Below the pieces are notes generated by a model. The model did no database searches. It saw only the letters and a list, made by a program, of their open reading frames with translations, and was not told the origin of the DNA. A stretch of 64,000 bases of DNA, from the IMG/VR virus record IMGVR_UViG_3300028654_000001, positions 186,001 through 250,000 of that record. One strand, 5' to 3'. The position numbers and the translations under genes are program-made. The first letter of the stretch is position 1. Every line of letters starts with the position of its first letter. Below are positions 12,805-58,046 of this stretch, piece after piece.

Positions 12805-13557
12805 ATGCTAATTCTCGGAATAATGGCGATTATACTGGTACTAACCATCTGTGTATCCACCGTTGTTTATTTTCTTGGTAAATACCACAAGGCAAAGGAT
12901 GAGGCTGAGAAACAGAGGTTGAGAGCGGTATCCGCTGAGAATTCTGCTCGAGTGGCTGCTGGACAACGACCGATACCTGGGAGTGGGGTTGATGCTAGTG
13001 AATTAGCAGCTAGGTATAGAACACCTTCCCCACCTGAACCCCCTCCAAACAGAACTGAGTCAGGAAGAGTTTCAACCCGACCAAGGACACGGCCAAGATC
13101 TCGTCAAAGTATGGAGTCCTCTTTCACTGATCTATTCAGTAGCATGAGTGAGCAGATGACCCAAGTCTTTACTGGGGTGTCTCAAGCAGTGAGCGTGGTT
13201 AGTGAGCAAGCTACCCTCTCTGTAGCCATAGCTCGGGATGCTCAATCCCTATTGAATCTTGGGTTTGTTCAAGAAAATATTCAACTTGATCAAAGTCGGA
13301 GGTCTAACTTACAACACCTGAGTCTCATTCCTGGAGTATCCTCTCGAACGGTCACTGCACTACAGAGGCTTGAAACTTCGAATCGTATAGCTGAGCACCT
13401 TAACTGGGGGCGACTAGTAATCCAATTCATGCGTATGATTGACTCTGGTGGGATAACCTTCGAGAACGAGAACAAGGCTCCTGAACCAACTACTGCTAAG
13501 GAACCAGAGCCCGAGAAGCTACCTCCAACAAGGTTTGAGCGCGAGGATGTGATATGA
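12805..13557 (+). CDS. membrane-anchored hypothetical protein with C-terminal TRFER tag
   Basis: N-terminal TM helix; ends EKLPPTRFEREDVI; shares a domain (..NR..WG..MR..SG..) with the next gene. Confidence 0.8.
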   Translation: MLILGIMAIILVLTICVSTVVYFLGKYHKAKDEAEKQRLRAVSAENSARVAAGQRPIPGSGVDASELAARYRTPSPPEPPPNRTESGRVSTRPRTRPRSRQSMESSFTDLFSSMSEQMTQVFTGVSQAVSVVSEQATLSVAIARDAQSLLNLGFVQENIQLDQSRRSNLQHLSLIPGVSSRTVTALQRLETSNRIAEHLNWGRLVIQFMRMIDSGGITFENENKAPEPTTAKEPEPEKLPPTRFEREDVI

Positions 13558-14603
13558 GACCATTGTTTGATGGATGGGCCTTGCTCGCCTTCCTGTTCTG
13601 GATGGGTTTCTGCTGGCTCCTCTGCGTACGAAGATTGTTCTGGGGTTCCTTGGTAAGGAACTTCATCACAAGTGTCTTCTTTGCAATCTCTGGTATTGCA
13701 CTCCTCTTCCTAGCAACTAGGCCTTGGATTAACACGGCCCACATCCCTCATGGAGTCAACTTTCCGCCCCCGAAGTACAATAGTGAGATCCTAAATCTTG
13801 TAGGATCAATGTGCCTGACTCTATCCCTCGCCATCAGGGTAGTAATTCAACCGATCCCTACGCCATGCCCAAGAGTCTTGGTTTCGGATGAGAACATATC
13901 TCACCTTAGAGGTACTTGGCACATCATTGATGAGGTCAGGGTTCGAGTGGGGGACATCGTAATCCTTATAAATCAGAATCGAGCTGTAGATAACGGAGCT
14001 TGGGAAGTCAGAAAGCCACCCTGGCGCAGACCTCAATCAAATCAGAAGGGCTACCATTCCTTTGGTTCTTGGTTCATTGCTAATTGTGGTAACAAGTATG
14101 CTCATACTCTATGGGTGGGATCATTATGCCGCAATGACATCATCGGTGAGGGTGAACTCGAGTGGAAGCAACTCGATCTAAACAGCAGAATACGAACTTT
14201 CGTGAGCCTCGAGATACCCTGCAGTATTGGTGAGACCGCCAAGTTCCTTCTTCGAGTAGGAGTACTTCCATACCAGATTCGATGCAATCTCCAAGAAGAA
14301 GCAGTTAGGGACCTTTTGCAAGCAGGACACATATCACCAACCTCAGTAGGTATCCTACTGCACAAGCCTGACCCTAATCGGAACTCTACTGAGTGGGGTC
14401 CTCGAGTCAAAGCGGTGATGAGGTTGCTCATTCACTCGGGTGAGTTTGAATACCCCAAGGAAGCCTACGAGAGTGCAGTAACTAATGGGTTCGAGCACCG
14501 TATGACTGAGACTGAGGTGAGGGCTGACTTCGAGGTTCGAGTTAGGAACGAAACCCCAGAACCTCGAACCCCGACTAGGTTCGAAAGAGATGAAGTGATA
14601 TGA
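13554..14603 (+). CDS. multi-TM protein with tail-fibre-like domain and TRFER tag
   Basis: Three hydrophobic segments; VGDIVILINQNRAVDNGAW; ends PTRFERDEVI. Confidence 0.75.
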   Translation: MRPLFDGWALLAFLFWMGFCWLLCVRRLFWGSLVRNFITSVFFAISGIALLFLATRPWINTAHIPHGVNFPPPKYNSEILNLVGSMCLTLSLAIRVVIQPIPTPCPRVLVSDENISHLRGTWHIIDEVRVRVGDIVILINQNRAVDNGAWEVRKPPWRRPQSNQKGYHSFGSWFIANCGNKYAHTLWVGSLCRNDIIGEGELEWKQLDLNSRIRTFVSLEIPCSIGETAKFLLRVGVLPYQIRCNLQEEAVRDLLQAGHISPTSVGILLHKPDPNRNSTEWGPRVKAVMRLLIHSGEFEYPKEAYESAVTNGFEHRMTETEVRADFEVRVRNETPEPRTPTRFERDEVI

Positions 14604-26803: not shown

Positions 26804-28042
26804 ATGACTACAGCTCTTGCACGACCTAAGTTTTCGTGGAGGAAAGTTCTCGCTTTCGCGACTGATATCCTCCAAAAGCTTCCGAATCGAAGTGATGGGG
26901 TTCTGGCTATCATTGTCAAGTCTCTTTCCATTGTTGACTCATTCAACGTCCAAATGAACAAGGGTAAGTCAACTGCCCTGTTCGACTTCTTCGGCGATCT
27001 AGACTTGATTGAGGTAACCAATGCCCAGTTTGTCAGCTTGTTCTACTCAACAGGACTGAGGGACAGCTTCAAGATCATCAAATTCGAGATGGGGGATTAT
27101 GTAGAGATCGTGAGAGCCGAACACACTGGGATCGGTACTCTCTACTTCGTTGAGTGGCACTGGGGAAGTAAACCAGAACCTTCTGCTGACTTCTGGCATA
27201 CCAAGGGGTTCAACTTTGAGAAAGCTCTCGAGGTACTTTGGGACAAGTTCCACGGACGCCTCCATCTAGGGATCACCCAAGACCGAAGTGGGGAGCTCAA
27301 GTCAACCTATTCGGAGATTCCCGAGCCAAAAGATCCACTCTTAGGGAAGACCGCGGCCGTCCTTGACGAGTTCAAGGAGCAACACCTACTCTACATGAAG
27401 GATAAGATCCCGAGAACCTATCTGTTCTGCGGAAAGCAGGGGATCGGTAAGACATGCTTCTGTCTTCGACTCTCTCAACTCACCGGCGGTCGAACTCTGC
27501 GCATTGATGCCTGTGGGATCACCTCGGTTGGAGTCAAGGACCTAGACTTCATCATCAATGGTCTGTGCCCTAACTTCCTAATCGTGGATGACATCGACCG
27601 AGCTCCGGAATTGGAGAAGTCCCTCCCAACCCTGTTCTCAATCCTCTCAGACTTCAAGTGCAAGCACCCCAATGTCACCGTGGCCTTGACCATCAATGAC
27701 ATCACTAAACTTGACCCAGCCCTTCTGAGGCCAGGTCGTATTGATGAGATCATCGAGTTTGAACCACCCGATGAAGAAGAGCGTAGTCAAATTCTTGAGG
27801 GGTATCTGAAAGAGTTCGAGGTAGCCACTGAGGTAGACCTGAAGAGGATCGCTGAGTCTACTGAGGGGTTAACCGCCGCCTACCTTCGAGAAGTAGCCCT
27901 TCAACTCCGGTATCGCCCCCAAGAGAGAGTATTGAAGGTCATCAACCGGATGAACGATCTTGCCAGCGCCAAAGAGGAAAAGAAGAAAGAAACTAAGTGT
28001 AGCGAACCCGTTGGAAACTCGGCCCGCGCGACTCCGGTGTAA
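26804..28042 (+). CDS. AAA+ ATPase
   Basis: Walker A GKQGIGKT, Walker B IVDDID, SRH LDPALLRPGRID. Confidence 0.9.
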   Translation: MTTALARPKFSWRKVLAFATDILQKLPNRSDGVLAIIVKSLSIVDSFNVQMNKGKSTALFDFFGDLDLIEVTNAQFVSLFYSTGLRDSFKIIKFEMGDYVEIVRAEHTGIGTLYFVEWHWGSKPEPSADFWHTKGFNFEKALEVLWDKFHGRLHLGITQDRSGELKSTYSEIPEPKDPLLGKTAAVLDEFKEQHLLYMKDKIPRTYLFCGKQGIGKTCFCLRLSQLTGGRTLRIDACGITSVGVKDLDFIINGLCPNFLIVDDIDRAPELEKSLPTLFSILSDFKCKHPNVTVALTINDITKLDPALLRPGRIDEIIEFEPPDEEERSQILEGYLKEFEVATEVDLKRIAESTEGLTAAYLREVALQLRYRPQERVLKVINRMNDLASAKEEKKKETKCSEPVGNSARATPV

Positions 28043-28050
28043 TTAGGGCC

Positions 28051-28344
28051 ATGACTCCCGATAAGATTATGACGGCTTGTCATAAGTACAAGGAACTCCT
28101 CTTTGGATACCAGCCCATTAGCTTCCCAACAGCAGAGATGATCCCAGCCCTTGAAAGGGATTGCCGAGACTACAACAGGGAAAGTAGTCTTCAACACGCC
28201 ATGTGGATGTGCACTGCCATAGAGGAGCAGGTGAAAAATGGTAAGTGCTCCAAAGCCGAACGCTGGCTATGCTTCATTCAAGGGGTTCTCTGGATGAACG
28301 GGATCTGCAGCATCGATGAGATGAGAGACGATAATCGGGATTAG
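28051..28344 (+). CDS. hypothetical phage protein
   Basis: HAMWM..KAERWLCFIQGVL pattern; GGTGTA 9 nt upstream. Confidence 0.75.
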   Translation: MTPDKIMTACHKYKELLFGYQPISFPTAEMIPALERDCRDYNRESSLQHAMWMCTAIEEQVKNGKCSKAERWLCFIQGVLWMNGICSIDEMRDDNRD

Positions 28345-29567
28345 GTAGCAGCTGCTATAGCTGATTTCCTGCTTTTACCCCTACGAATTAGGGAGATATT
28401 AGAGTGATGAGTCTTGTATATCTTTGCAAGGTGAGTTCCCGGTAAGGAACTGGCTAGTATCTCCTGAACCTCATTATCTGTAAGTTTGGTGGCATAGTGG
28501 GTTTCACCACGAGGTCGACTCTCAGGGTGCAAACGAGACCCAGAGCGATCCCCACGTGGGACTCGCTCTGGGTTGGTAATAGAACTATGTCTCCCTTTCC
28601 TAGACATATCTATCATATTGTCTAGTTGAGTCCCCTCAAATAAGTGGTCTGGGTTGGCACAGCTCCTATTATCACACTTGTGGAGCGCAAACATTCCTGG
28701 GAGCAACTTACGCCCAAGCTTGGCTTCTAGTACTATACTGGTGACCCTACGTGTCTTTCTATTCACCCCTATCAAACCATACCTGTCATTACTTGAACCA
28801 GTACAAGTCCAACAACGGCCTAATTCCTCACGTAGTGTAGGCCCATTAATGTTCAGGTGCTGGATCAAAACTTCCGCAATTCGCATTCCGTGGAAGTATG
28901 CTGATTGTTCTTTCAAAACTTGAAGCTCCGCTGACACAACTACTTGCGGATTCAGAAGGTGCTTCCAAGTTAAACCCTTACAGATCTTTTGAATACAACT
29001 CTTGTTTACTCCAAACTTAGTGGCAAGCCACTGATAGCTCTCATGACTAATACGAATTTCCTGAATCATGTCTGCAGTGAGCTTAGAGTTCGAATTACCA
29101 GACCCACCCCTACTTTGAAGCACTTGCCTACAACACCTGCCCTTGGTGACCTTATCCACCATATTGTCTCTTGTTGTGCCTTCGAACAAGTGACTCGGTT
29201 CAAAACATGAGGGGTTGTCGCACCTGTGACATGAGAGCATACCAGAAGTAAGAGGGCGTTTTAGCTTGGCTTCCAATACCAAACGACTAGCCTGGTAGTG
29301 ATTTCTACCGATCATTACCCGGTAACGCTCACCGATCCGACTACTAGACTTTTCTAAGCACGGGCCTAAATCCTGTCGTACAACTACCTCAATCAGATTG
29401 TAAGTGATCCGATCCGCCAGAGCACGACCATGATAGATCATGGTCATATTGTAAATGTTTTGGATACTCATTGGCTCTAATAGATAGACATTAAATGAAG
29501 TATATGGTTTAGGGGTACCTAAACCATATACCACACTGCCGATTTTACTACAATGCTTCGGTAACAA
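28341..29567 (-). CDS. HNH endonuclease with tandem HNH modules and HTH-like tails
   Basis: CHRCDNPSCFEPSHL..N..D and LHKCDNRSCANPDHL..N..D; true start probably downstream (~29471-29447). Confidence 0.88.
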   Translation of the reverse strand: MLPKHCSKIGSVVYGLGTPKPYTSFNVYLLEPMSIQNIYNMTMIYHGRALADRITYNLIEVVVRQDLGPCLEKSSSRIGERYRVMIGRNHYQASRLVLEAKLKRPLTSGMLSCHRCDNPSCFEPSHLFEGTTRDNMVDKVTKGRCCRQVLQSRGGSGNSNSKLTADMIQEIRISHESYQWLATKFGVNKSCIQKICKGLTWKHLLNPQVVVSAELQVLKEQSAYFHGMRIAEVLIQHLNINGPTLREELGRCWTCTGSSNDRYGLIGVNRKTRRVTSIVLEAKLGRKLLPGMFALHKCDNRSCANPDHLFEGTQLDNMIDMSRKGRHSSITNPERVPRGDRSGSRLHPESRPRGETHYATKLTDNEVQEILASSLPGTHLAKIYKTHHSNISLIRRGKSRKSAIAAAT

Positions 29568-32668: not shown

Positions 32669-33076
32669 GTGGCTTCCCCTCTTTTCAACTCTCAGAATCG
32701 CCCTCGGGCGGCTTCCCACTTAGCCGAGATTGACTTCGGCCGACTGGAAAAGTCTCGTAAAGAGAGCGGGAACGTCATCATAACCTACGAGACTTGCCCG
32801 GGTATTTTCCTACTGGCCTATGAGCAGGTTCATAATAGGAGCATCACATTTGCTCCGTTCCCAGTACCGAAGTACTGGGAACGACATGTGACCAGGGTTC
32901 ACTTACTGGTACCCGCTCCAGGCTCAATCAATCTCAAGAATGGGTCCCAAGTTACAACTATACCGGAGGATAGTGTAGCCCATGTTCTAGGGGCCATCCA
33001 GTATGTGCTAGAACAAGGTGGGTTCCAGGTAGTACTAGGTGCTCCAACTCGATTTGAACGAGCCGACGTGATTTAG
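32669..33076 (+). CDS. hypothetical protein with TRFER tag
   Basis: Ends APTRFERADVI; GGTGTA 10 nt upstream. Confidence 0.75.
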   Translation: MASPLFNSQNRPRAASHLAEIDFGRLEKSRKESGNVIITYETCPGIFLLAYEQVHNRSITFAPFPVPKYWERHVTRVHLLVPAPGSINLKNGSQVTTIPEDSVAHVLGAIQYVLEQGGFQVVLGAPTRFERADVI

Positions 33077-33598
33077 ACGAATAATCTTACGGACTGCCAT
33101 GAGAATCTTCCCCAACCGATTGACTCCAGTCTTTGAGCTTCCCCATCCCCAATAGGGATCGTGGACAGTACTCTCGATAATTGGACTTTCTCCGGTGCTC
33201 AAAAGAACCAACTGGCAGCTCTCATTCTGATCGAACTTGGATAGAACTACCCCGAACATTGCCCAATCTTTGACAAGGTTAATGACCTTGCTCGGACCAC
33301 GTCCATCATCTACAAGGTTATCGAAGTCCGGGTGCTCGTTTGTCCTGATAAATGGAGAATCCCAATCTTCCCGTAAGGGAAGGGTCCTATCTCGTCCGAT
33401 GGTGGCTGCAGCCATAGGATTGGCAGCGTTATGAATCCGATCAACTAAGTCCATCCGATGTGGGAAGAACTTCATTGCCTGAAAAGAAGCTTCTGAGGTC
33501 TTCCACTTACGACCCATAAACATAAGGCCATGCCTTGAAAAGTTTGAGAAACATCCGTAGGGTATCTCCTTTGGTGAATAAAATAGTACTAGTTCCAT
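33035..33598 (-). CDS. NADAR (YbiA-like) family protein
   Basis: YGCFSNF, TSEASFQAMKF, LREDW, KF.Q, LLSTG, DPYWG..G.NRLGKILM.VR. Confidence 0.9.
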   Translation of the reverse strand: MELVLFYSPKEIPYGCFSNFSRHGLMFMGRKWKTSEASFQAMKFFPHRMDLVDRIHNAANPMAAATIGRDRTLPLREDWDSPFIRTNEHPDFDNLVDDGRGPSKVINLVKDWAMFGVVLSKFDQNESCQLVLLSTGESPIIESTVHDPYWGWGSSKTGVNRLGKILMAVRKIIRLNHVGSFKSSWST

Positions 33599-33790
33599 AT
33601 TTTTGAGTACACCGAGTAGAAAGTTGTTTACTTCAGCCTACCGTTGATGTACACCTAGACCTTAGGCGGCTCTAGAGAGGACCTTCTGCTCCGCCCCCCT
33701 CAAGACAGAGGGTCTCCTAGGGCCGTCAATTATTTTGGTATTTAGAGGGATACATTTGTCCAGAAATGAGTGTACCCTGATTTAGGTAAA

Positions 33791-34276
33791 ATGCTCTGCG
33801 TCGGATTATTCGGAACTTGTGACAAGCATAAATGGAGAGATCCATTTATGGAGAAGTACGATGAGCTGGGAATCCCCTACTTCAATCCGATGGTCGACAA
33901 TTGGCACGCGGGGCTTGTACCACTTGAAGCTCAGCACTTGGCCGAAGATGAGATCATCATGTTCCCGATCCTCGGGTGGTCCTATGCTGAGGGCAGCCTT
34001 TCAGAGATGGGTTTTGGACCATTGAAGGCTATGCGCCAGAACAGTAATCGAAGCTTTGTGTACTTCATCGAGACAGTTCTCCACGAGAGGTTAACTGATC
34101 CAGAGCGATGTGAGGCATCACTCCGAGCTAGGGAGCTCCTCATTGGTCACCTAAAAGAGTTGGGTGCACCCAACATCTACCTTGTGCAGAGTCTCGAGCA
34201 AGCTCTCGAGACCACCATTGATCTCTATGGTGTACACAAGAAGATGAGTGAGTTGCACAATGCCTCAGCTGGATAG
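33791..34276 (+). CDS. nucleoside deoxyribosyltransferase-like protein
   Basis: GLFGTC..WR..YFNP.V..W..E..SLSEMG Rossmannoid pattern. Confidence 0.55.
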   Translation: MLCVGLFGTCDKHKWRDPFMEKYDELGIPYFNPMVDNWHAGLVPLEAQHLAEDEIIMFPILGWSYAEGSLSEMGFGPLKAMRQNSNRSFVYFIETVLHERLTDPERCEASLRARELLIGHLKELGAPNIYLVQSLEQALETTIDLYGVHKKMSELHNASAG

Positions 34277-34377: not shown

Positions 34378-34845
34378 GTGGCAACCCCTAGCATCGACGA
34401 TCCTTACCGTATACTAGCTTCATACGCTCTCCGTAAGCCACCTGAGGTTCTACCTAGCTCTGTTATTTTCGAGGCTAGGAAGAGGGCAAAGCAAGTATGT
34501 GGTTATGACCCACCACTATTGGATAGATTTCTCAGCTTCTATACAGACGTTGAACCTCACATAAGTGTCACAGCTGAGGATGCCGTACGGGCTGAGAAAC
34601 TACTTCGGTGTATCTGGAGGGGTGATGTCGATGAGGCCTATGATCCAACCCCTGGTACCTACCAGCATTTCAAGGGAAACTTCTACACAGTACAATCGAT
34701 AGCCAAGCTCCTACAAGGGCCAAAAGAAGAGCTGGCTGTTGTGTACGGAAATGATGATGGAACGTTTGTTAGACCCCTACGAGAGTGGGTTGAGTTAGTA
34801 CTTTGGCCTGATGGTGAATACCATCCTAGATTCAAGAGACAGTAG
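34378..34845 (+). CDS. DUF1653-domain protein
   Basis: GTYQHFKGNFYTV..VVY..FVRPL..PRF. Confidence 0.8.
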   Translation: MATPSIDDPYRILASYALRKPPEVLPSSVIFEARKRAKQVCGYDPPLLDRFLSFYTDVEPHISVTAEDAVRAEKLLRCIWRGDVDEAYDPTPGTYQHFKGNFYTVQSIAKLLQGPKEELAVVYGNDDGTFVRPLREWVELVLWPDGEYHPRFKRQ

Positions 34846-34847
34846 TT

Positions 34848-35597
34848 ATGCCAGCTGGAGCCTTTTGGCGCCTTCAGTACAGAGATGGCCTAGATCACAG
34901 AATTCAAGCTCGGGCTGATAGGCAAAGGTTTGCCCAAGACAGGAACGTCCTCACAGCCATTACTCGCTACCACGAGGGCGCTTTCGTTCTGGAGGTTCAG
35001 CTTGTCGATGATGCGGAGTCTACCTTCGATGGGAGTCTTCACGAGCTCTACAATCGACAGCAGTCCATTCGAAACCCACCGCCAGTGACTAGGACCATCT
35101 CCTCCTTAGCTAGATGGGGAAACACACCTGATTCAAATGGGATGGTCATAGATCCCCAAGTCAGGGAGAACATCATCAGTCAGTACATCCAAAGCTCAGG
35201 GGGTCGTCAACGATTGGCCCAGGCGATGGTAGCCCCTCTCCGAACACGACTAGACTACTCGGGGATGGCAAGACGGGTATTCATGGTTGAACCTCTCCAA
35301 GGAGGGGCCTTGCCCACCTACGACAAGGACATGGTCAGTGACTTCAACCCGCCCGACTGGGTCGACGCTGGCACGTGGGTCAAGAGTGACGATAAATACG
35401 CGATTATTGTGGCCACCGAGCCGAAGAATACCGAAAGCCTACCCTTCAACTCGGCTATAGTTGAATACCAGGTCTGGAGGGATTACGGGCCTCCAAAGAG
35501 GCTTGACGCGGAAACCTTCTGTAAGTACTGGTTACCATCCGAGACTCCAGCAGAGCCTAGAACCCGATTCGAACGAATTCTGATGGACGATGATTGA
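34848..35597 (+). CDS. mosaic protein: capsid-like segment + PxW domain + TRFER tag
   Basis: IISQYI..GRQRLAQAMVAPLR.RLDY...RRVFMVEPL..GALPTYDKD; ends PRTRFERILMDDD. Confidence 0.75.
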   Translation: MPAGAFWRLQYRDGLDHRIQARADRQRFAQDRNVLTAITRYHEGAFVLEVQLVDDAESTFDGSLHELYNRQQSIRNPPPVTRTISSLARWGNTPDSNGMVIDPQVRENIISQYIQSSGGRQRLAQAMVAPLRTRLDYSGMARRVFMVEPLQGGALPTYDKDMVSDFNPPDWVDAGTWVKSDDKYAIIVATEPKNTESLPFNSAIVEYQVWRDYGPPKRLDAETFCKYWLPSETPAEPRTRFERILMDDD

Positions 35598-35931
35598 AAC
35601 CCCACTTATCGATCTACCTACCGTGAGTAAGGGAAGACGGTTGGTTCAGGTCATCCTGGCCATACTAAAAACCCATCCCGAGGGGATCACAGAGGTTGGT
35701 CTCCACAAGGATGACTTCTGGATCTTGCTGGACATGCTCGGGTATTCATGTTCAACTGCAGTCGTGACCCTGCACAAGGTCAAGGTGTTTACTGATAATA
35801 CCAAGCAGGATATGCTTAGTATCCGAGCAAGTGGTGGTAGTTCCAAGGTCTTTATCGAGGATATCTGGGTGATCCTACATCCAGAAGAGGAAACCCGACT
35901 TCACCGCGTACTGAGGGAGGGAGTAATTTGA
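35590..35931 (+). CDS. hypothetical protein with TRLHR tag variant
   Basis: Ends ETRLHRVLREGVI. Confidence 0.7.
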   Translation: MIETPLIDLPTVSKGRRLVQVILAILKTHPEGITEVGLHKDDFWILLDMLGYSCSTAVVTLHKVKVFTDNTKQDMLSIRASGGSSKVFIEDIWVILHPEEETRLHRVLREGVI

Positions 35932-36297
35932 ATGATGAGGGTTCTGATCATTGATTCATACGCCAAGGAAGAAGCAGACAAGGTAGTCAAGTTTGCGTTC
36001 CGCCCAGAGAATCTTTACCGTCCAGGGACTACCGCCAGGATCCCAGGAAATGTGAGGAAGCATATCCTTGTACTCGGGGACTACAAGATAGTCTTCTCGT
36101 TGACACGAGATCCTCAAACTGGTGAGGTTTTCAGACACCTCTCAATGTCGGTTCCAACTCTAGGGGCCTTCCCACACCCTGCAGCGATAACCGAGGTCAT
36201 CGACCTATTTGGATTCAAGGGGGGTTTGTGTAACTGTCAACTCGATGCAAATAGAGTTGATAATTGCATCACAGTAGCTCAGAACCTCGAATCTTAG
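35932..36297 (+). CDS. hypothetical protein
   Basis: VFS..RHLSMSVP..PHP pattern. Confidence 0.75.
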   Translation: MMRVLIIDSYAKEEADKVVKFAFRPENLYRPGTTARIPGNVRKHILVLGDYKIVFSLTRDPQTGEVFRHLSMSVPTLGAFPHPAAITEVIDLFGFKGGLCNCQLDANRVDNCITVAQNLES

Positions 36298-36680
36298 ATC
36301 ACATCCTCCCTCTCAAATCGAGTTGGAGGGAGTTTTTCTTCTACCACCTTCTCTCTTTTGCGACTTAGGACCTGTGGCTTTGGGGCTGGACGCCACTTAT
36401 CTAGGACATCTTTTAACCAACGAGAGATGGCTGACTTCGGGTTACCTTCACGTTCGAAGTGGATGTAGTTGTTCCCACCTGAAACTACCCGTATACCTGT
36501 TATTACGAACACAGGCATATCATAGGGTGTAGGGTTTTCGGGCAGGTTACGACAAACCCAATCAGGTCCTTCAGGGAATAGTGAGGTAATCTTGGATGGT
36601 GGAAGTGGGATTATCTTACTCCCCACTGCAACCCAACTATCATCCTTTGGAGCTTTCCAGGGGTCTTTGATCCGAGGCAT
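36294..36680 (-). CDS. PxW-domain protein with TRFER tag
   Basis: Ends EKLPPTRFEREDVI. Confidence 0.75.
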   Translation of the reverse strand: MPRIKDPWKAPKDDSWVAVGSKIIPLPPSKITSLFPEGPDWVCRNLPENPTPYDMPVFVITGIRVVSGGNNYIHFEREGNPKSAISRWLKDVLDKWRPAPKPQVLSRKREKVVEEKLPPTRFEREDVI

Positions 36681-36718
36681 TAGTTACCACTACACCGGTG
36701 TAAGTGGTAACTAATGCC
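36676..36718. promoter_or_regulatory. palindromic divergent promoter region (two back-to-back GGTGTA motifs)
   Basis: ggcattagttaccactacacc|ggtgtaagtggtaactaatgcc; perfect inverted repeat except one extra A. Confidence 0.7.
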
Positions 36719-37754
36719 AACGTGGAGGATTGAGTACCCTAGCCTACTTGCAAACGATAGAACACAGCTATACGCCGAGTGGGCTCTCATCCGAAACGAT
36801 CCTATGCTGACAAACTGTGAGACTACAGAAAGTCAGGACAACCCAATAACGATACTTACAGCCTCTTTCCTTGGGTTTGGCCCTGAGAACCCCGCGGTCT
36901 CAGAGATTATCCGAAGGCGAGGGATCCTACAACTTCCTGTCAACATCCAGATGCCGCTTATAGTATCCCGTCTGGCATCCAACAGTGAAGGTAGGTATGA
37001 GGTCGTTAGGGATGACCAACCCAGGTTCGGTGATGGCAGGCATTCGAGACCAGACAGGTTGCGAGGACACACCATTAACGCGATCATGTTTGATGTTGAG
37101 GCTTCGTTCAATAGTGGGATCCCACTACATCCTGGGGATCTTGTCGGAGTGGATCCCGCTACTGGATTAGTTATCCGTGAGGGTTTGTCCTTACTCTCGA
37201 CTCCTCCCGTTGGGATTGTAGCTGGGGTTGATATCGCAGTTGGTAGTGATCGATCTGAGATTACCCTGGCTCGGAGAAGGTTCCCAGAAGATGCTGATAG
37301 AGCTTTCAGGCAAGAGTTCATGGGGGAATTCCCAGAAGAAGGCTCCCCGGTTAGAACTGAGCTGACAGTCCTCGCTGCGGATCCCCCAAGAGCCCCCATT
37401 GGGTTCACGGTGCATGAGCGGATTGGAATGGCAGTCATCAACCCACGTACAATCGAACGGATTCAGGCAACTAGGGTTAACGTACCCCTATTCGAACTTG
37501 AGAATAACCCACAAATCAACCTGAGTGACATACGAGAACGAAGACTTGACCTGATCGAGCGTTCGGTGCACTCGATCCAAGAACAAGAGGATCGGGAGAT
37601 CTTGGCCGCACTCGAGGGTACCTTCACGAACCAGCCGAGGCCTCCAGTGACCCCGACCCCAGTGGTGGCACCTGAACCTGTGGAGGAGAACTTCATCCGT
37701 AGAACCCGCTTCGAGCGTATCCTTGATGATACAGATGAACTGTACCCACTCTAA
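36714..37754 (+). CDS. mosaic protein with terminase-like and capsid-like fragments + TRFER tag
   Basis: LRGHTINAIMFD, GVDIAVGSDRS, FRQEFMGEF, RTELTVL, PLFELENNPQI..I.ERR.DLIER; ends RTRFERILDDTDELYPL. Confidence 0.75.
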   Translation: MPTWRIEYPSLLANDRTQLYAEWALIRNDPMLTNCETTESQDNPITILTASFLGFGPENPAVSEIIRRRGILQLPVNIQMPLIVSRLASNSEGRYEVVRDDQPRFGDGRHSRPDRLRGHTINAIMFDVEASFNSGIPLHPGDLVGVDPATGLVIREGLSLLSTPPVGIVAGVDIAVGSDRSEITLARRRFPEDADRAFRQEFMGEFPEEGSPVRTELTVLAADPPRAPIGFTVHERIGMAVINPRTIERIQATRVNVPLFELENNPQINLSDIRERRLDLIERSVHSIQEQEDREILAALEGTFTNQPRPPVTPTPVVAPEPVEENFIRRTRFERILDDTDELYPL

Positions 37755-38290
37755 GTAGGATTTAGGATCGATCCTTCTGCAACAGCTTCAGTAGCCTCCA
37801 GAGCTTCCTTGGCTACCCCTCTAGATTTGATGGTAATTAAACCGGTGGCTGTACGGGTACCCGTTCTATGAACTCGATGCATCACCCCCTTGTGCACGTA
37901 AGTTCGTTCGGGTAGCATTCGAGTCCAAACCGCGATAAGTCTCTCTCCGAGCCCCCTGACGGTCAGGGTTGACCCTTTGAGGAGTTCTTGGTCAAGAGGT
38001 TCAATCCCAGGGCACTCGCCTTCTATGTCCTCCAGAGGTTCACCATTGAGTGCTTCCCCCAATGAGATTAACCCAACCTCAATGGTTGGATACTTACCAG
38101 ACGGTCCAGTTGGAGTTAGAACTAGAGCGATTCTTTTTCCTTCTGCTCGTACTTCCAGTGTAGATCCTTGTAGAATGGCCCTGTCAACGAGATCAACCTC
38201 TCGGTCAAGACGATCGAACCTAGAAGTTACCTGGCCTGTAGCAGGCTCGGTAACCTCAATGTCGTGGTCAAAACGGGTCATTTCAGGCAT
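37751..38290 (-). CDS. hypothetical protein with two N-terminal tag copies and an internal duplication
   Basis: TRFDH..SRFDR; LQGSTLEVR..RIAL / LKGSTLTVR..RLIA repeat. Confidence 0.7.
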   Translation of the reverse strand: MPEMTRFDHDIEVTEPATGQVTSRFDRLDREVDLVDRAILQGSTLEVRAEGKRIALVLTPTGPSGKYPTIEVGLISLGEALNGEPLEDIEGECPGIEPLDQELLKGSTLTVRGLGERLIAVWTRMLPERTYVHKGVMHRVHRTGTRTATGLITIKSRGVAKEALEATEAVAEGSILNPT

Positions 38291-38735: not shown

Positions 38736-39611
38736 ATGCCACTTCCAGATTGGGCTATCCTTGGATCCGTTATCTACCCACGGCCGCGTGATTCATATAT
38801 TAGAATCATAAGGGAATCTGGGGCTATCATAGTATATGCACTTCGAGAAGAGGTGCAGTTGAATCAGAACCATGTGGTATTCAGCGTAGACTCTGAAACT
38901 CTAGAGCATAACTGGATGCCACTTTCAGAAGCTGCACCCTTGTTTTCTGACTCAACTTATGGGCCAATGCCCTCCTGGTTTACAATTGGCTCGCGAATTA
39001 TTCAAAACCACAACAATCTGACTTACATAATCCTCTCTTTTGACCCTATCCGCTGGTCAATGACTGCAACATTAGAAGACGAAGTGAGTCCAACCAACTT
39101 CACGGTGACAAACTTCATTAGACATTGGAGACCCGCTAGCTCAATCACAGAGCAGAAACCCACTACGAATGTCACTAATATCGTTCAAGGTAGGGTTCAA
39201 GTTGCCCCAGATTGGTTGTATCCGGGGAAGTTCCTTAGAAGGAAAGTGAATCCAAATCACGTGTTTGTGGTCTCAAGCCTAGACCCAAGACGTTTCGTTG
39301 CAGTACTGACTAGACTGGATAGCCTAAGGCCGATGGTTCTTGGATCGATCTTTGAAGAAGCTGATTATTGCCGTATCGATGAACAGTTCACTCAAGTCGA
39401 CAGTACAGGGAGCCCAGCAGCTGAGTATACGTGCAAGAAGTGCGGTGAAACCGGCGAGAGAGACTACGACGCTGAGGAGAGACGAGCCAGCATCGACACT
39501 GTTAGGGCTTATACCTGCAAGAGGGGTCACACCTGGTACTTCGTGGCGGGTACCGATCAAGATGGTAAGCCAGCCAATCCAAGTAGATTTGAGCGTGATA
39601 TCGGCATTTAG
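38736..39611 (+). CDS. triple PxW-domain protein with Zn ribbon and SRFER tag
   Basis: LPDW/MPSW/APDW repeats, CKKC..CKRGH, ends PSRFERDIGI. Confidence 0.8.
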   Translation: MPLPDWAILGSVIYPRPRDSYIRIIRESGAIIVYALREEVQLNQNHVVFSVDSETLEHNWMPLSEAAPLFSDSTYGPMPSWFTIGSRIIQNHNNLTYIILSFDPIRWSMTATLEDEVSPTNFTVTNFIRHWRPASSITEQKPTTNVTNIVQGRVQVAPDWLYPGKFLRRKVNPNHVFVVSSLDPRRFVAVLTRLDSLRPMVLGSIFEEADYCRIDEQFTQVDSTGSPAAEYTCKKCGETGERDYDAEERRASIDTVRAYTCKRGHTWYFVAGTDQDGKPANPSRFERDIGI

Positions 39612-39653
39612 TAGTATTCTTTTTATAGTTTTGGTGTAGTGTTCACTGCCATT

Positions 39654-40838
39654 ATGCAAAAGAAGCCGATTGTGAAGTCCACACCGAACAAGAAACCTAG
39701 CTGGTGGAACGCCCTTAACCTAGAATCACTAGATAGGTACAGTGATATGGCCCGGATGGTCATAGATCACGCTGTAACATCCGGAAAAACGGTATTCTCT
39801 GGGAATTGTAAGGGCAACCTGGAAGATGCTGATCAGGAAGACGCTTTCGAAGCTTTCGTTCAGGCATTGGTAGACGGCATTCAGGGTTACGTCAGCTTCA
39901 CCCATGCTCCTCCATTCGGCCGTGGGGCACTTGAAACTTGGGTGCTATGGGAAGGTGGATCGATTACCATCAAAATGGGTCTTGACAAAAAGGTCATGGT
40001 CAGTGTTGTAGCCCTTGGTTCCGAGGATTATGCAAATATTGCAGGGATTCTTGGTGGGTACCTGATTCCAGATAATGTCCGTCAACCGGTATACTCCCTG
40101 GCTAACGGAAATAATGGGATCGAAATCATGGAAGTCGGTCTAGCAGGAGAGTATCTAGAACGAGAGAACTACGTGCAGGAAGTTCTCGACGGTTTCGAGT
40201 ACATCATTGAGGAGATCAGAAGAGAGAGTCCAATCGGTCGTCTATCCATTATCTATGGGGATCCTGGTAGCGGGAAAACATACTTGATTCGTGGAATTAT
40301 CAACGAAATTCCAGATGCTATCTTCGTCCTAGTACCCTGCCACCTCGTTGAAGACTTGGCTGGCCCTCAACTGGTACCTATGTTGATTAGGGCGAGAAGC
40401 TTAGCAGGTACCAATAACCCCATTGTCCTGATTATCGAAGACGCGGACAGGGCCCTAGTACCTAGAGAAGAAGGTTCCCTGGCGGCTATCTCCTCTTTGT
40501 TGAATGTATCGGATGGTATCCTTGGCCGTACCCTAAATCTCAGGGTAATCTGTACAACCAATGCAAAGTTGGAGGATATCGATCCAGCCTTAAAACGGGC
40601 AGGTCGTCTATCTGTACAACTCAACATCGGACTTCTACCACTTGAAAAGTGTCAGGAGATCTACAGTAGACTCATGGACGGAGCTGAAGCATTATTCAGC
40701 GAACCCTTACCACTAGCTGAGATCTACCGATTTGTGAGTACCGAAAAGTTCGCCGACTCCGACGAGGACACTGACGAGAGTGAGGACGATGATGACGAGG
40801 ACGATGATGACGAGGACGATGATGATGACGAGGAATAA
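39654..40838 (+). CDS. AAA+ ATPase with poly-Asp/Glu tail
   Basis: GDPGSGKT, IIEDAD, LLN.SDG, TTN, DPALKRAGR; GGTGTA upstream. Confidence 0.9.
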   Translation: MQKKPIVKSTPNKKPSWWNALNLESLDRYSDMARMVIDHAVTSGKTVFSGNCKGNLEDADQEDAFEAFVQALVDGIQGYVSFTHAPPFGRGALETWVLWEGGSITIKMGLDKKVMVSVVALGSEDYANIAGILGGYLIPDNVRQPVYSLANGNNGIEIMEVGLAGEYLERENYVQEVLDGFEYIIEEIRRESPIGRLSIIYGDPGSGKTYLIRGIINEIPDAIFVLVPCHLVEDLAGPQLVPMLIRARSLAGTNNPIVLIIEDADRALVPREEGSLAAISSLLNVSDGILGRTLNLRVICTTNAKLEDIDPALKRAGRLSVQLNIGLLPLEKCQEIYSRLMDGAEALFSEPLPLAEIYRFVSTEKFADSDEDTDESEDDDDEDDDDEDDDDDEE

Positions 40839-46087: not shown

Positions 46088-46382
46088 TAAGCCTCTGACT
46101 GAACGTGACTATGAGGTCCTTGGTGAACTCGTGCATCAGTCCAAGGACGGTGAGTGGTTGCGCCCAATGGATGTAGGTGGTTTTGACGGATCTCACCACT
46201 CAGCTACCCTGAACAATCTTGTCAGCCACGGTATGGCTGAACTAACGTGGTTCGGAAAACCTTGGCAGCCTCGCTTACACAAAAGGTACAGGGTAACCAA
46301 AAATGGAGAAGCTCTGTACCAAGAGTACAAGTTGAAGAAGCAAGCGGCTAGATCAGATCCTCTTCATCTAGTAAAGCGTTGA
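46080..46382 (+). CDS. putative winged-helix protein
   Basis: RPMDVGG...SHHS.TL..LV..G..YRVT..G. Confidence 0.65.
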   Translation: MGNKPLTERDYEVLGELVHQSKDGEWLRPMDVGGFDGSHHSATLNNLVSHGMAELTWFGKPWQPRLHKRYRVTKNGEALYQEYKLKKQAARSDPLHLVKR

Positions 46383-46842
46383 TTCTATCAAAGCGAGTGG
46401 GTTGAACACTTGGGTTAACCCCATTAAATAGTGGGGTTTGGGTTCCTAGATTAGAGAAAACCCATCGAACTGGAGTACTCGGGTTTACCAGGATAGAGGT
46501 GCCAAATACGATGAAAGTAACCTCAAAGTTTACCCTCAGGATCTCTAGAACGAGATTGTCCCAACCTTTACCCTCTTTAATTATGGTAAAGTCAAAGGCA
46601 AAGGCGGTCCCTCTTTTTGAGTCTAGATATGAACGAGCCTCATACTCACCTGGTGCATAGATTCTAATCGGTTTTGATTCCTTGATACCACTTACGCGCC
46701 ACTTGCGGGTGGGGTTGCGATCAACCCTGACGATAGATGGAGTCCAGGTCGGTTCAGGCCCTCTCCCTAATATGATCTGTGGAGTGTTCCACTTGATCTT
46801 ATCAACCCAGACATCTGGACGGGATAGGTCAATTTGAATCAA
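46348..46842 (-). CDS. hypothetical protein with TRFDR tag
   Basis: Ends QPTRFDRINALLDEEDLI. Confidence 0.75.
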   Translation of the reverse strand: MIQIDLSRPDVWVDKIKWNTPQIILGRGPEPTWTPSIVRVDRNPTRKWRVSGIKESKPIRIYAPGEYEARSYLDSKRGTAFAFDFTIIKEGKGWDNLVLEILRVNFEVTFIVFGTSILVNPSTPVRWVFSNLGTQTPLFNGVNPSVQPTRFDRINALLDEEDLI

Positions 46843-57800: not shown

Positions 57801-58046
57801 CTAATCTTCATCGTCTCTAAGAATCCGATCGAACCGAGTACTCCCAAGAAGCGTTGTACTCGGTTTACTAGACACCGATGGCACTTCATCGGTGTCTAGA
57901 ATTCGATCGAATCGAGTTGGTCGAGAAGTACTTTGGGTATCTGGTACTTGACTCCGAATAGGCTCTACACCCGCTTGACTTTTAGGCTCTTGTTTTCTAC
58001 GAGACATAAGAGTGTAGAAGTCATCTGTCCAAAAACCGCCGCCCAT
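57801..58046 (-). CDS. mini-protein: copy of the vWA N-terminus + two TRFDR tags
   Basis: MGGGFWTDDFY vs MGGGSWSHDFY; PTRFDRIL and STRFDRIL. Confidence 0.8.
   Translation of the reverse strand: MGGGFWTDDFYTLMSRRKQEPKSQAGVEPIRSQVPDTQSTSRPTRFDRILDTDEVPSVSSKPSTTLLGSTRFDRILRDDED

What the first reader, a model, noticed from the sequence alone, without database searches (positions are those of the whole stretch)
34848..35597. Second tagged mosaic carrying a capsid N-terminal-like segment
Residues at ~35160-35330 (VRENIISQYIQSSGGRQRLAQAMVAPLRTRLDYSGMARRVFMVEPLQGGALPTYDKD) resemble, from recall, the N-terminal part of the same capsid family whose middle and C-terminal parts appear in 36714..37754. 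The segment sits between an N-domain loosely shared with 36714 (W-R-[LI]-x-Y...R.Q..A[DE]...D..LT) and a PxW domain plus tag. The two genes may be paralogous scaffolds displaying complementary capsid pieces.
Basis: partly seen in the sequence, partly recalled or inferred. Interest (0 to 1): 0.75.

Follow-up and report, generated by a model that had tools for sequence, protein, structure and literature searches.

The report
Tagged protein carrying capsid N-arm copy
A conserved gene of a 512-kb soil megaphage encodes a four-module protein whose central module is a diverged copy of the first 62 residues of the phage's own major capsid protein; it is one of at least six genes in this genome that reuse sub-domains of the capsid protein, which is unusual, and its function is still unknown.

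Summary
Gene A (window 34848-35597, 249 aa) has residues 100-161 homologous to residues 1-62 of the phage's own HK97-fold major capsid protein (MCP; 48% identity, E 2e-16). Two curated capsid profiles agree. The neighbour, gene B (36714-37754), carries the MCP C-terminal part fused in permuted order to the post-E-loop strand and spine helix. A and B therefore hold non-overlapping pieces of the N-arm and P-domain.

The window lies in a 512,571-bp virus record whose MCP resembles phage G gp27. Four more ORFs elsewhere in the genome also carry MCP pieces.

A has full-length orthologues (42-76% identity) with an unchanged architecture. Its capsid-like module is under purifying selection (dN/dS about 0.1-0.2). 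It keeps the 12 positions that are conserved in true MCPs. So it is a stable exapted module, not a variable display insert.

A and B share a ferredoxin-like N-domain topology and an RTRFERIL C-terminal tag. About 62 ORFs carry this tag, and only this phage clade has it.

My best guess (about 40%): the module docks in trans onto an MCP-type P-domain, B's or the capsid's, as the capsid N-arm does. The complex prediction gave no answer. Function remains untested.

The parts
34848..35597 (+). Gene A, 249 aa plus stop: a four-module tagged protein
   Evidence: ORF list. Eleven full-length orthologues at 42-76% identity. Conserved synteny.
34848..35072 (+). A N-domain (residues 1-75), predicted beta-alpha-beta-beta-alpha, ferredoxin-like
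   Evidence: AF2 pLDDT about 76. VIA matches to ABM, ACT and S6-type folds at Z 5-6. Mean ortholog identity 67%, dN/dS 0.04-0.07.
35073..35144 (+). Variable, disordered linker (residues 76-99)
   Evidence: pLDDT below 50. Mean ortholog identity 18%, pN 0.40-0.47.
35145..35330 (+). Capsid N-terminal module (residues 100-161), homologous to MCP residues 1-62: N-terminal helix, first strand and the start of the E-loop
   Evidence: BLASTP to own MCP, 48% identity, E 2e-16. phrog_2522 E 2e-9. NF042927 E 9e-8. MCP HMM E 1e-23. It shares 12 positions that are at least 90% conserved with 59 true MCPs. dN/dS 0.11-0.22. In AF2 it is a helix at 103-132 followed by coil.
35331..35552 (+). 'PxW' small beta-barrel (residues 162-235)
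   Evidence: AF2 pLDDT about 90. The best structural matches are DUF1653 3be3 (Z 6.5) and Tudor, CarD or KOW-like barrels; the Z values are middling. No Pfam match.
35553..35594 (+). C-terminal tag, class I: P-R-T-R-F-E-R-I-L-M-D-D-D
   Evidence: 92% mean identity among orthologues, dN/dS about 0. There are 62 C-terminal copies genome-wide, with variable synonymous sites.
36714..37754 (+). Gene B, 346 aa plus stop: the companion tagged mosaic
   Evidence: ORF list. Twelve orthologues. It always lies 1-2 kb downstream of A where flanks are available.
36714..36947 (+). B N-domain (residues 1-78), with the same beta-alpha-beta-beta-alpha(-beta) order as A
   Evidence: AF2. VIA Z 6-7.5 to ferredoxin-like or ABM folds. 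Eight PDB chains are shared with A's hit list. Sequence similarity to A is not significant.
37347..37478 (+). B residues 212-255, homologous to MCP residues 245-289 (C-terminal strands)
   Evidence: BLASTP 56% identity, E 4e-9. MCP HMM positions 269-311.
37473..37619 (+). B residues 254-302, homologous to MCP residues 85-137 (post-E-loop strand plus spine helix). It is joined directly to the MCP C-terminus, so B is circularly permuted
   Evidence: BLASTP 47% identity, E 8e-8. Alignment A7 shows the junction ...T-R-V / R-V...P-L-F-E. The permuted order is conserved in three related contigs.
37698..37751 (+). B C-terminal tag, class I: R-R-T-R-F-E-R-I-L-D-D-T-D-E-L-Y-P-L
34378..34845 (+). Upstream DUF1653 gene. 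It ends 2 nt before A's start and is syntenic in all relatives
   Evidence: Pfam PF07866 E 3e-9. Synteny.
35590..36297 (+). Two small conserved genes (113 and 121 aa) between A and B. The first overlaps A's stop by 8 nt
   Evidence: No family match.
36294..36680 (-). Class II-tagged gene (128 aa, ends P-T-R-F-E-R-E-D-V-I) lying between A and B

Best explanation
What is shown. Gene A is a stable, vertically inherited accessory protein of a phage-G-like soil megaphage. It has five parts in order:
- a ferredoxin-like N-domain;
- a disordered linker;
- a 62-residue copy of the N-terminus of the phage's own HK97-fold major capsid protein (N-helix, first P-domain strand, start of the E-loop);
- a small Tudor/DUF1653-like beta-barrel;
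- a clade-specific C-terminal T-R-F-E-R tag.

What is inferred.
- The capsid module cannot fold alone, yet it keeps the residues that are conserved in real capsid proteins. It therefore most likely does what a capsid N-arm does: it packs its helix and adds its strand onto an MCP-type P-domain supplied in trans.
- The nearest candidate partner is gene B, 1.1 kb downstream. B encodes the rest of the P-domain (C-terminal strands fused to the post-E-loop strand and spine helix) but lacks the first strand, the E-loop and the A-domain.
- B also has the same N-domain fold and the same tag variant. The alternative partner is the capsid protein itself.
- Either way the product would be a capsid-like surface that cannot polymerise. 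It would tie A's other domains, and perhaps other tagged proteins, to the capsid or to capsid-binding partners.
- The tag is taken to be a shared targeting motif whose receptor is unknown.
For: Homology to the capsid N-terminus.

The full-length gene at genome 403.6 kb is the real MCP:
- PDB 6wkk phage G gp27, E 9e-62;
- Pfam Phage_capsid above its cut-off;
- homologues annotated as major head protein.

The same 12 positions are at least 90% conserved across 11 A orthologues and 59 MCPs.

Purifying selection acts on the module: dN/dS 0.11-0.22, against a near-neutral linker.

AF2 gives only a helix followed by coil for the module in A, and pLDDT below 50 for the capsid parts of B. This is consistent with a need for a partner.

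The pieces in A and B do not overlap, and together they cover the N-helix and P-domain.

A and B co-occur in conserved synteny in every contig with enough flank.

A and B have the same N-domain topology, overlapping structural hit lists, and the same R-T-R-F-E-R-I-L tag.

A, B, C and the tag are all absent from LR745208.1, although its MCP is 84% identical.

An N-helix-like motif recurs in another tagged paralog family (hhalign probability 50%, E 1.6e-4) and in ORF D (E 7e-5).
Against: - No direct evidence of any binding. The one complex prediction (A module plus B module) gave score 0.00, a 'no answer' verdict, which is neither for nor against.
- The pieces are not a clean three-way split. 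B and the third fragment gene C both contain the spine helix, and no fragment carries the E-loop.
- N-domain relatedness is not significant by sequence, and the structural Z values are middling.
- A and B lie among accessory or counter-defence-type genes (NADAR, DUF1653, AAA ATPases), 180 kb from the structural module. This fits an early, non-virion role at least as well as a virion role.
- Some B orthologues lack part of the capsid-like region.
- Domain assignments rest on alignment to the HK97 family. No structure of this MCP was modelled here.
Confidence: 0.4

Rival explanations
1. Scaffold-binding hitch-hiker (cargo). The N-helix module binds what the capsid N-arm binds in the procapsid, namely the scaffolding or core protein. 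A, and other proteins carrying the N-helix motif or the tag, are thereby carried into the head and delivered with the DNA.
For: - In P22 and 80alpha/SaPI1 the scaffold C-terminus binds the coat N-arm. In encapsulins, cargo peptides bind next to the N-helix. Both points are from my knowledge of the literature and were not tested here.
- phrog_2522 also rings in the Thermotoga maritima control genome, which suggests an encapsulin-like N-terminus.
- The N-helix motif recurs in tagged proteins.
- Tagged proteins include a Tad2-like and other small accessory proteins that would profit from co-injection.
Against: - The Q-rich scaffold-like protein next to the MCP has no T-R-F-E-R motif.
- No proteomics is available.
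- A relative with an 84%-identical MCP has neither the tag nor the fragments, so the capsid does not need them.
- The tag differs from known encapsulin and T4 targeting peptides.
Confidence: 0.15
2. Assembly modulator or poison. Capsid sub-domain fragments (A, B, C, D, E, F) cap or block MCP interfaces. They either hold back premature self-assembly of about 3000 MCP copies, or they sabotage the capsids of co-infecting relatives (superinfection exclusion).
For: - Six ORFs carry single MCP sub-domains that lack the E-loop needed for lattice contacts.
- They are conserved under selection.
- Such fragments are accessory: they are absent from LR745208.1.
- Similar fragment fusions occur in other metagenomic phages.
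Against: - This does not explain the extra folded domains or the shared tag.
- The fragments are only 41-56% identical to the resident MCP.
- Nothing here bears on timing or stoichiometry.
Confidence: 0.15
3. Immune decoy. Early-made capsid fragments occupy host sensors that recognise capsid protein, so the sensors are not triggered later in infection.
For: - The genomic neighbourhood is rich in counter-defence-type genes: NADAR, and Acb1/2H-phosphoesterase-like genes in the orthologous contigs.
- The fragments together cover most of the MCP surface.
Against: - Known capsid sensors are activated by binding, so a decoy would be risky (my knowledge).
- No PADLOC or anti-defence family match.
- The host and its defences are unknown.
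Confidence: 0.1
4. Neutral domain shuffling. The capsid piece is an old recombination remnant that now serves only as a helix or spacer, with no capsid-related role.
For: - The junction in B sits at a short shared R-V motif, as expected from a deletion between tandem MCP copies.
- A LAGLIDADG-like endonuclease gene sits beside the MCP.
- The accessory half of the genome is highly mosaic.
Against: - The module keeps exactly the positions that are conserved in functional MCPs.
- It evolves far more slowly than the adjacent linker.
- It is retained in orthologues down to 42% identity.
Confidence: 0.1
5. Variable display scaffold. A and B are carriers into which different capsid pieces are swapped.
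For: B orthologues differ by indels that remove parts of the middle and capsid-like regions.
Against: - A's content is invariant in 11 orthologues and in four independent runs.
- The A segments are monophyletic.
- The permuted order in B is conserved.
Confidence: 0.03

Closest known systems
HK97-fold major capsid proteins of the phage G gp27 type (PDB 6wkk; phrog_2522; NCBIfam NF042927)
   Same: Residues 100-161 of A are homologous to the first 62 residues or so of this family and keep its conserved positions. B carries the C-terminal strands and the spine helix.
   Different: A holds about a fifth of the fold. It lacks the E-loop, spine helix and A-domain, so it cannot be a shell subunit. The piece is embedded between unrelated folded domains. 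B's pieces are circularly permuted.
Encapsulin cargo-loading peptides
   Same: A short conserved C-terminal peptide sits on many unrelated proteins in a genome that has an encapsulin-like HK97 shell protein. The pieces in A and B correspond to the N-helix and P-domain region where encapsulin cargo peptides bind (this last point is from my knowledge).
   Different: The tag sequence (T-R-F-E-R...) is unlike known cargo peptides. Tagged genes are not next to the shell gene. A close MCP relative has no tag. Binding was not tested.
T4 capsid-targeting sequence and internal proteins; phiKZ-type inner-body or ejected proteins
   Same: Large phages load sets of accessory proteins into the head through a shared short signal.
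   Different: Those signals are N-terminal and are removed by the prohead protease. Here the motif is C-terminal (sometimes internal or doubled), and no cleavage or packaging evidence exists.
Capsid-assembly redirectors of satellites (SaPI CpmB, PICI Ccm) and vertex paralogues (T4 gp24)
   Same: These are extra proteins related to, or binding to, the MCP N-arm that change or complete capsid assembly.
   Different: Ccm and gp24 are full-length MCP paralogues. CpmB is a scaffold mimic with no MCP homology. A is a sub-domain fragment fused to other domains, and it is encoded by the phage itself.
DUF1653 / Tudor-like SH3 barrels
   Same: A's C-terminal barrel superposes best on a DUF1653 structure (3be3, Z 6.5). 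A DUF1653 gene sits immediately upstream.
   Different: There is no Pfam or BLAST similarity. The Z value is in the range of common arrangements.

Membership tests
HK97-fold major capsid protein (phrog_2522 / NF042927 / PF05065) | Significant sequence homology to the family profile | tested here: met
   phrog_2522 E 2e-9. NF042927 E 9e-8. Own-MCP BLASTP E 2e-16. Custom MCP HMM E 1e-23.
HK97-fold major capsid protein (phrog_2522 / NF042927 / PF05065) | Coverage of the whole fold (N-arm, E-loop, P-domain with spine helix, A-domain) and a score above the curated cut-off | tested here: not met
   Only profile positions 41-98 of 318 or 4-58 of 280 are matched. The NF042927 score is 31 bits against a cut-off of 80. 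There is no Pfam Phage_capsid hit. A is therefore not a capsid protein; it contains a capsid fragment.
Encapsulin-type cargo (C-terminal cargo-loading peptide) | A C-terminal peptide matching the known cargo-peptide consensus, and a gene adjacent to the shell gene | tested here: not met
   The tag is P/R-T-R-F-E-R-(I-L-x-D-D | E-D-V-I), which is unlike the Gly/Ser/Leu-rich encapsulin peptides (my knowledge). The MCP gene is 180 kb away.
Encapsulin-type cargo (C-terminal cargo-loading peptide) | Physical binding of the peptide to the shell interior | not testable with these tools
Tag-to-MCP binding was not examined.
T4-type capsid-targeting sequence / internal proteins | An N-terminal targeting peptide ending at a prohead-protease site | tested here: not met
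   The shared motif is C-terminal in 62 ORFs. A's N-terminus is a folded domain.
DUF1653 (PF07866), for the PxW barrel | A match to the Pfam model | tested here: not met
   No Pfam hit for A. No BLAST alignment to the adjacent DUF1653 protein. There is only a structural match at Z 6.5.
Ferredoxin-like / dimeric alpha+beta barrel (ABM-type), for the N-domains of A and B | Beta-alpha-beta-beta-alpha-beta topology with significant structural similarity | tested here: inconclusive
   Both models have this element order. Z is 5-6 for A and 6-7.5 for B against the same PDB chains, below the level the tool calls telling. Sequence comparison of A against B is not significant.
   Eleven orthologues have the same architecture. 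No indels or joints appear in four runs. The module is monophyletic.
Split capsid protein (pieces that together rebuild one HK97 fold) | Non-overlapping pieces that cover the fold, and physical association of those pieces | tested here: inconclusive
   The pieces in A and B do not overlap, but C overlaps B at the spine helix and the E-loop is absent from all of them. Association is untested, since complex prediction gave no answer.

The most novel reading that the evidence does not exclude
A and B pair through their ferredoxin-like N-domains and by strand complementation. Together they rebuild, as a soluble unit that cannot polymerise, the inner N-helix/P-domain face of the capsid protein. That face would be the receptor for the T-R-F-E-R tag. 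If so, this megaphage clade runs an encapsulin-like cargo-addressing system for about 60 accessory proteins, with A/B acting as adaptor or holding station. More broadly, dissected capsid sub-domains would be a reusable interaction toolkit in phage-G-like megaphages.
Probability: 0.1. Interest if true: 0.9.

Novelty: new variant of a known kind. Interest (0 to 1): 0.68.

Why it matters
HK97-fold capsid proteins are normally seen as indivisible shell subunits or as whole-gene paralogues. Here a giant phage keeps at least six genes under selection that each hold only one sub-domain of its capsid protein. One of them is circularly permuted. Two of them (A and B) lie side by side with complementary pieces and the same clade-specific peptide tag, a tag that marks about 8% of the genome's ORFs.

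If the pieces dock on capsid or scaffold, this would show how very large heads recruit or organise accessory proteins. It would also provide a ready-made pair of tag and receptor for loading proteins into HK97 shells. If instead they act as assembly brakes or decoys, that would be a new class of phage self-regulation or counter-defence.

Both readings can be tested directly with recombinant proteins, even though the phage is uncultured.

Tried and rejected
- Complex prediction of the A module (alignment A6) with the B module (A7): score 0.00, verdict 'no answer'. It is not evidence either way.
- My idea that B's middle region holds pieces of the decoration protein or terminase: no similarity (BLASTP E above 1, no PHROG hit). 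Rejected.
- N-domain homology between A and B by sequence: BLASTP E 0.045 and hhalign probability 2.5%. Not shown.
- PxW barrel against other PxW-type ORFs and against the DUF1653 neighbour: no significant alignment.
- Foldseek PDB search with model A: nothing at E of 0.001 or better. ESM Atlas by features and by shape: nothing usable.
- The tag as a DNA- or RNA-level repeat: rejected, because synonymous positions vary freely.
- Silent-cassette or gene-conversion donor idea: rejected, because the pieces are only 41-56% identical at protein level and are embedded in frame in conserved ORFs.
- Assembly or gene-calling artefact: rejected, because the same architecture appears in JGI, ENA, NCBI and Logan assemblies and near-identically in four runs.
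- Sigma-70 promoter and terminator scan of 33-39 kb: no more sites than in shuffles.
- RNA runs: none was listed, so there are no expression data.
- Literature search for the tag motif: nothing relevant. The phage G multi-omics paper mentions no capsid fragments or tags.
- NCBIfam and PADLOC on neighbours: no informative hits.
- The 228-kb tag-rich relative contig has no MCP or fragment; it is a partial genome and uninformative.

Full report
SETTING. The window is bases 186001-250000 of a 512,571-bp IMG/VR virus record with direct terminal repeats. The same DNA occurs near-identically in several rhizosphere metagenome runs. The genome uses the standard code, with all three stop codons in use.

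The phage's real major capsid protein (MCP) is a 289-aa ORF at genome 403571-404440 on the minus strand:
- It matches phrog_2522 over profile positions 30-314 (E 7e-54).
- It matches Pfam Phage_capsid above the cut-off.
- It matches the solved phage G capsid protein gp27 (PDB 6wkk, E 9e-62).
- It lies beside a Q-rich scaffold-like ORF and a 210-aa ORF.
- It has an 84%-identical orthologue in the 485-kb uncultured phage LR745208.1 and a 48%-identical one in Tunturiibacter phage Tunturi_5, where it is annotated as major head protein.

THE OBSERVATION.
- Two independent curated capsid profiles hit it: phrog_2522 positions 41-98 (E 2e-9) and NCBIfam NF042927 positions 4-58 (E 9e-8).
- BLASTP against the genome's own ORFs aligns A 100-161 with MCP 1-62 at 48% identity, E 2e-16.
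- An HMM built from 93 family members gives E 1e-23.

Gene B (36714-37754, 346 aa) aligns over residues 212-255 with MCP 245-289 and over residues 254-302 with MCP 85-137. In alignment A7 the true MCPs end at ...V-T-R, and their middle piece begins R-V-x-x-P-L-F-E. B reads straight through...A-T-R-V-N-V-P-L-F-E. B therefore contains a circular permutation joined at a short shared R-V. The simplest origin is a deletion between tandem MCP copies; this is an inference. The permuted order is kept in three related IMG/VR contigs, including one whose gene A is only 53% identical.

ANATOMY OF A. AlphaFold2 with 11 orthologues gives five parts:
- an N-domain at residues 6-70 (beta-alpha-beta-beta-alpha, pLDDT about 76);
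- a disordered stretch;
- a helix at 103-132 followed by coil to about 160 (pLDDT 43-63), which is the capsid-like module;
- a confident beta-barrel at 165-235 (pLDDT about 90);
- a short helix in the tag.

The barrel resembles DUF1653, Tudor and CarD-type barrels only at middling Z (6.5), and it has no sequence match. The N-domain resembles ferredoxin-like ABM, ACT and S6 folds (Z 5-6).

B's model is confident only for its N-domain, which has the same element order as A's. It hits eight of the same PDB chains at Z 6-7.5. Its capsid-like parts have pLDDT below 50 apart from the spine helix. By sequence the two N-domains are not demonstrably related.

CONSERVATION.
- A has 10 full-length orthologues at 42-76% identity in JGI, ENA, NCBI and Logan assemblies. 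All have the same architecture.
- Mean pairwise identity by region is: N-domain 67%, linker 18%, capsid module 59%, barrel 57%, tag 92%.
- Against the nearest orthologues dN/dS is 0.04-0.07 for the N-domain, 0.11-0.22 for the capsid module, about 0.11 for the barrel and about 0 for the tag. The linker has pN 0.40-0.47 with synonymous sites near saturation.
- In a joint alignment of 11 A modules and 59 MCP N-termini, the same 12 positions are at least 90% conserved: in A, G119 R120 L123 A124 M127 P130 R132 R142 V147 L150 G153 Y158.
- A tree of these segments puts all A modules in one clade, sister to the MCPs of the same phage lineage. This means one old acquisition, although resolution is low with only 68 residues.
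- Synteny is conserved in every contig with flanks: DUF1653, A, two small genes, a minus-strand class II-tagged gene, B, then an AAA ATPase further on.
- In one MAG contig B is split into two ORFs. B orthologues show indels, some of which remove part of the capsid-like region.
- Four runs show no indel or joint in A or B.

NOT ONLY A AND B. The MCP HMM finds four more ORFs with significant capsid pieces:
- C (genome 462.6 kb, E 3e-16) has orthologues at 61-88% identity. It aligns from the spine helix through the A-domain to the next strand, about MCP 97-255.
- E (16 kb, E 1e-6) and F (477 kb, E 9e-6) carry A-domain pieces.
- D (133.5 kb, E 7e-5) carries the N-helix.

A tagged paralog family at 101-113 kb carries an N-helix-like motif (hhalign probability 50%, E 1.6e-4). 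No fragment contains the E-loop. Comparable fragment fusions exist in other metagenomic phages. One example is P0151: a Tat-like signal, then MCP 1-60, then the spine helix. It is a complete gene in its contig.

THE TAG. Sixty-two ORFs end in P/R-T-R-F-E-R followed by one of two endings: I-L-x-acidic (class I, which includes A and B) or E-D/P-V-I-stop (class II).
- Synonymous sites vary freely, so selection acts on the peptide.
- The tripeptides TRF, RFE and FER are 8- to 11-fold enriched in ORF tails.
- LR745208.1 and Tunturi_5 have no copy of the tag. LR745208.1, the one scanned for tail tripeptides, has no alternative enriched tail either.
- LR745208.1 shares only 117 of 827 ORFs with this genome. 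Nearly all of those are in the 240-440 kb core, and A, B and C find only its MCP.
- The class II DNA pattern occurs in just seven IMG/VR contigs from four related samples.
- Twenty tagged proteins gave almost no Pfam hits. The exceptions are a sub-threshold Tad2-like domain and a sub-threshold RecA/KaiC-like ATPase.

INTERPRETATION. The following is shown: A is a stable mosaic whose central module is a selected, diverged copy of the MCP N-terminus. B holds complementary, permuted P-domain parts. Both carry the clade's tag. The genome holds a wider set of capsid sub-domain genes.

The following is inferred. The module is unstructured alone yet keeps the family's conserved residues. It therefore most likely makes the contacts a capsid N-arm makes, in trans. 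B is the nearest partner because it lacks exactly the first strand and N-helix that A carries. The MCP itself is the alternative partner.

The mechanism remains unproven, because the only complex job gave no answer. Rival readings cannot be excluded: scaffold-binding cargo, assembly brake or poison, immune decoy, and neutral remnant. The variable-display reading is contradicted for A.

COMPARISON AND NOVELTY. A is not a member of the capsid family. It covers about a fifth of the fold and scores 31 bits against a cut-off of 80. It is also not a member of the encapsulin-cargo or T4 capsid-targeting classes by their defining features. It may nevertheless work like one of them.

I found no description of the tag or of sub-domain capsid fragments in the searchable literature. 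I rate it a new variant of a known kind, namely exaptation of HK97 capsid protein parts and peptide-addressed phage accessory proteins. Interest is fairly high, because it is unexpected and directly testable.

Noticed in passing
genome-wide; in the window e.g. 12805-13557, 13554-14603, 32669-33076, 36294-36680(-), 38736-39611, 46348-46842(-): About 62 ORFs end in a clade-specific peptide tag, P/R-T-R-F-E-R, followed by either I-L-x-D/E-D/E or E-D/P-V-I-stop. Selection is at the peptide level. The tag is absent from the nearest sequenced relatives, and its function is unknown.
   Followed up: partly
genome 462583-463104(-), 16084-16677(-), 477304-477882(-), 133477-133845(-) (outside the window): Four further ORFs carry single sub-domains of the capsid protein: spine helix plus A-domain, two A-domain pieces, and the N-helix. 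C has conserved orthologues.
   Followed up: partly
genome 101154-112950(-) (outside the window): A paralog family of small tagged proteins has an N-helix-like motif (T-x-x-G-R-x-x-I-A-x-S) that resembles the capsid N-terminus (hhalign probability 50%).
   Followed up: partly
L001:426-1394(-) = genome about 402.5-403.5 kb: A LAGLIDADG-type homing-endonuclease-like ORF lies directly downstream of the major capsid gene.
   Followed up: no
window 39639-40838(+) and 26804-28042(+): There are two classic-clade AAA ATPases. The first has a long poly-Asp/Glu tail and is conserved in synteny downstream of A and B. They are possible handlers of tagged proteins, but this is pure speculation.
   Followed up: no
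window 33035-33598(-), 33770-34276(+), 34378-34845(+): A NADAR-domain protein, a weak nucleoside 2-deoxyribosyltransferase-like ORF and a DUF1653 protein lie just upstream of A. Orthologous contigs also carry Acb1/2H-phosphoesterase-like and HAD_SAK_2 genes. The neighbourhood looks like an accessory or counter-defence region.
   Followed up: partly
window 57801-58046(-): An 81-aa ORF carries two tandem copies of the tag. A few other ORFs have the motif internally or near the N-terminus, e.g. 37751-38290(-).
   Followed up: no
window 38736-39611(+): A 291-aa class II-tagged protein has three P-x-W...G repeats followed by a Cys-rich zinc-ribbon-like stretch.
   Followed up: no
L006:11845-12833: In one MAG contig the B orthologue is split into a 160-aa N-part and a 131-aa ORF that holds the capsid-like part and the tag. 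This could be a frameshift, a deletion or a genuine split.
   Followed up: no
L088:3097-3807 (protein P0151): An unrelated metagenomic contig encodes a complete 236-aa protein made of a twin-arginine-like signal, MCP residues 1-60 and the spine helix, with the E-loop deleted. Capsid-fragment fusions are therefore not confined to this clade.
   Followed up: partly
genome 10102-10578(-) and 288766-289425(-): Tagged proteins include a Tad2-like (anti-Thoeris-like) domain and a RecA/KaiC-like ATPase. Both score below the Pfam cut-offs.
   Followed up: no
window 28341-29567(-): An HNH or His-Me finger homing-endonuclease-like ORF (Pfam HNH_3, zf-His_Me_endon).
   Followed up: no
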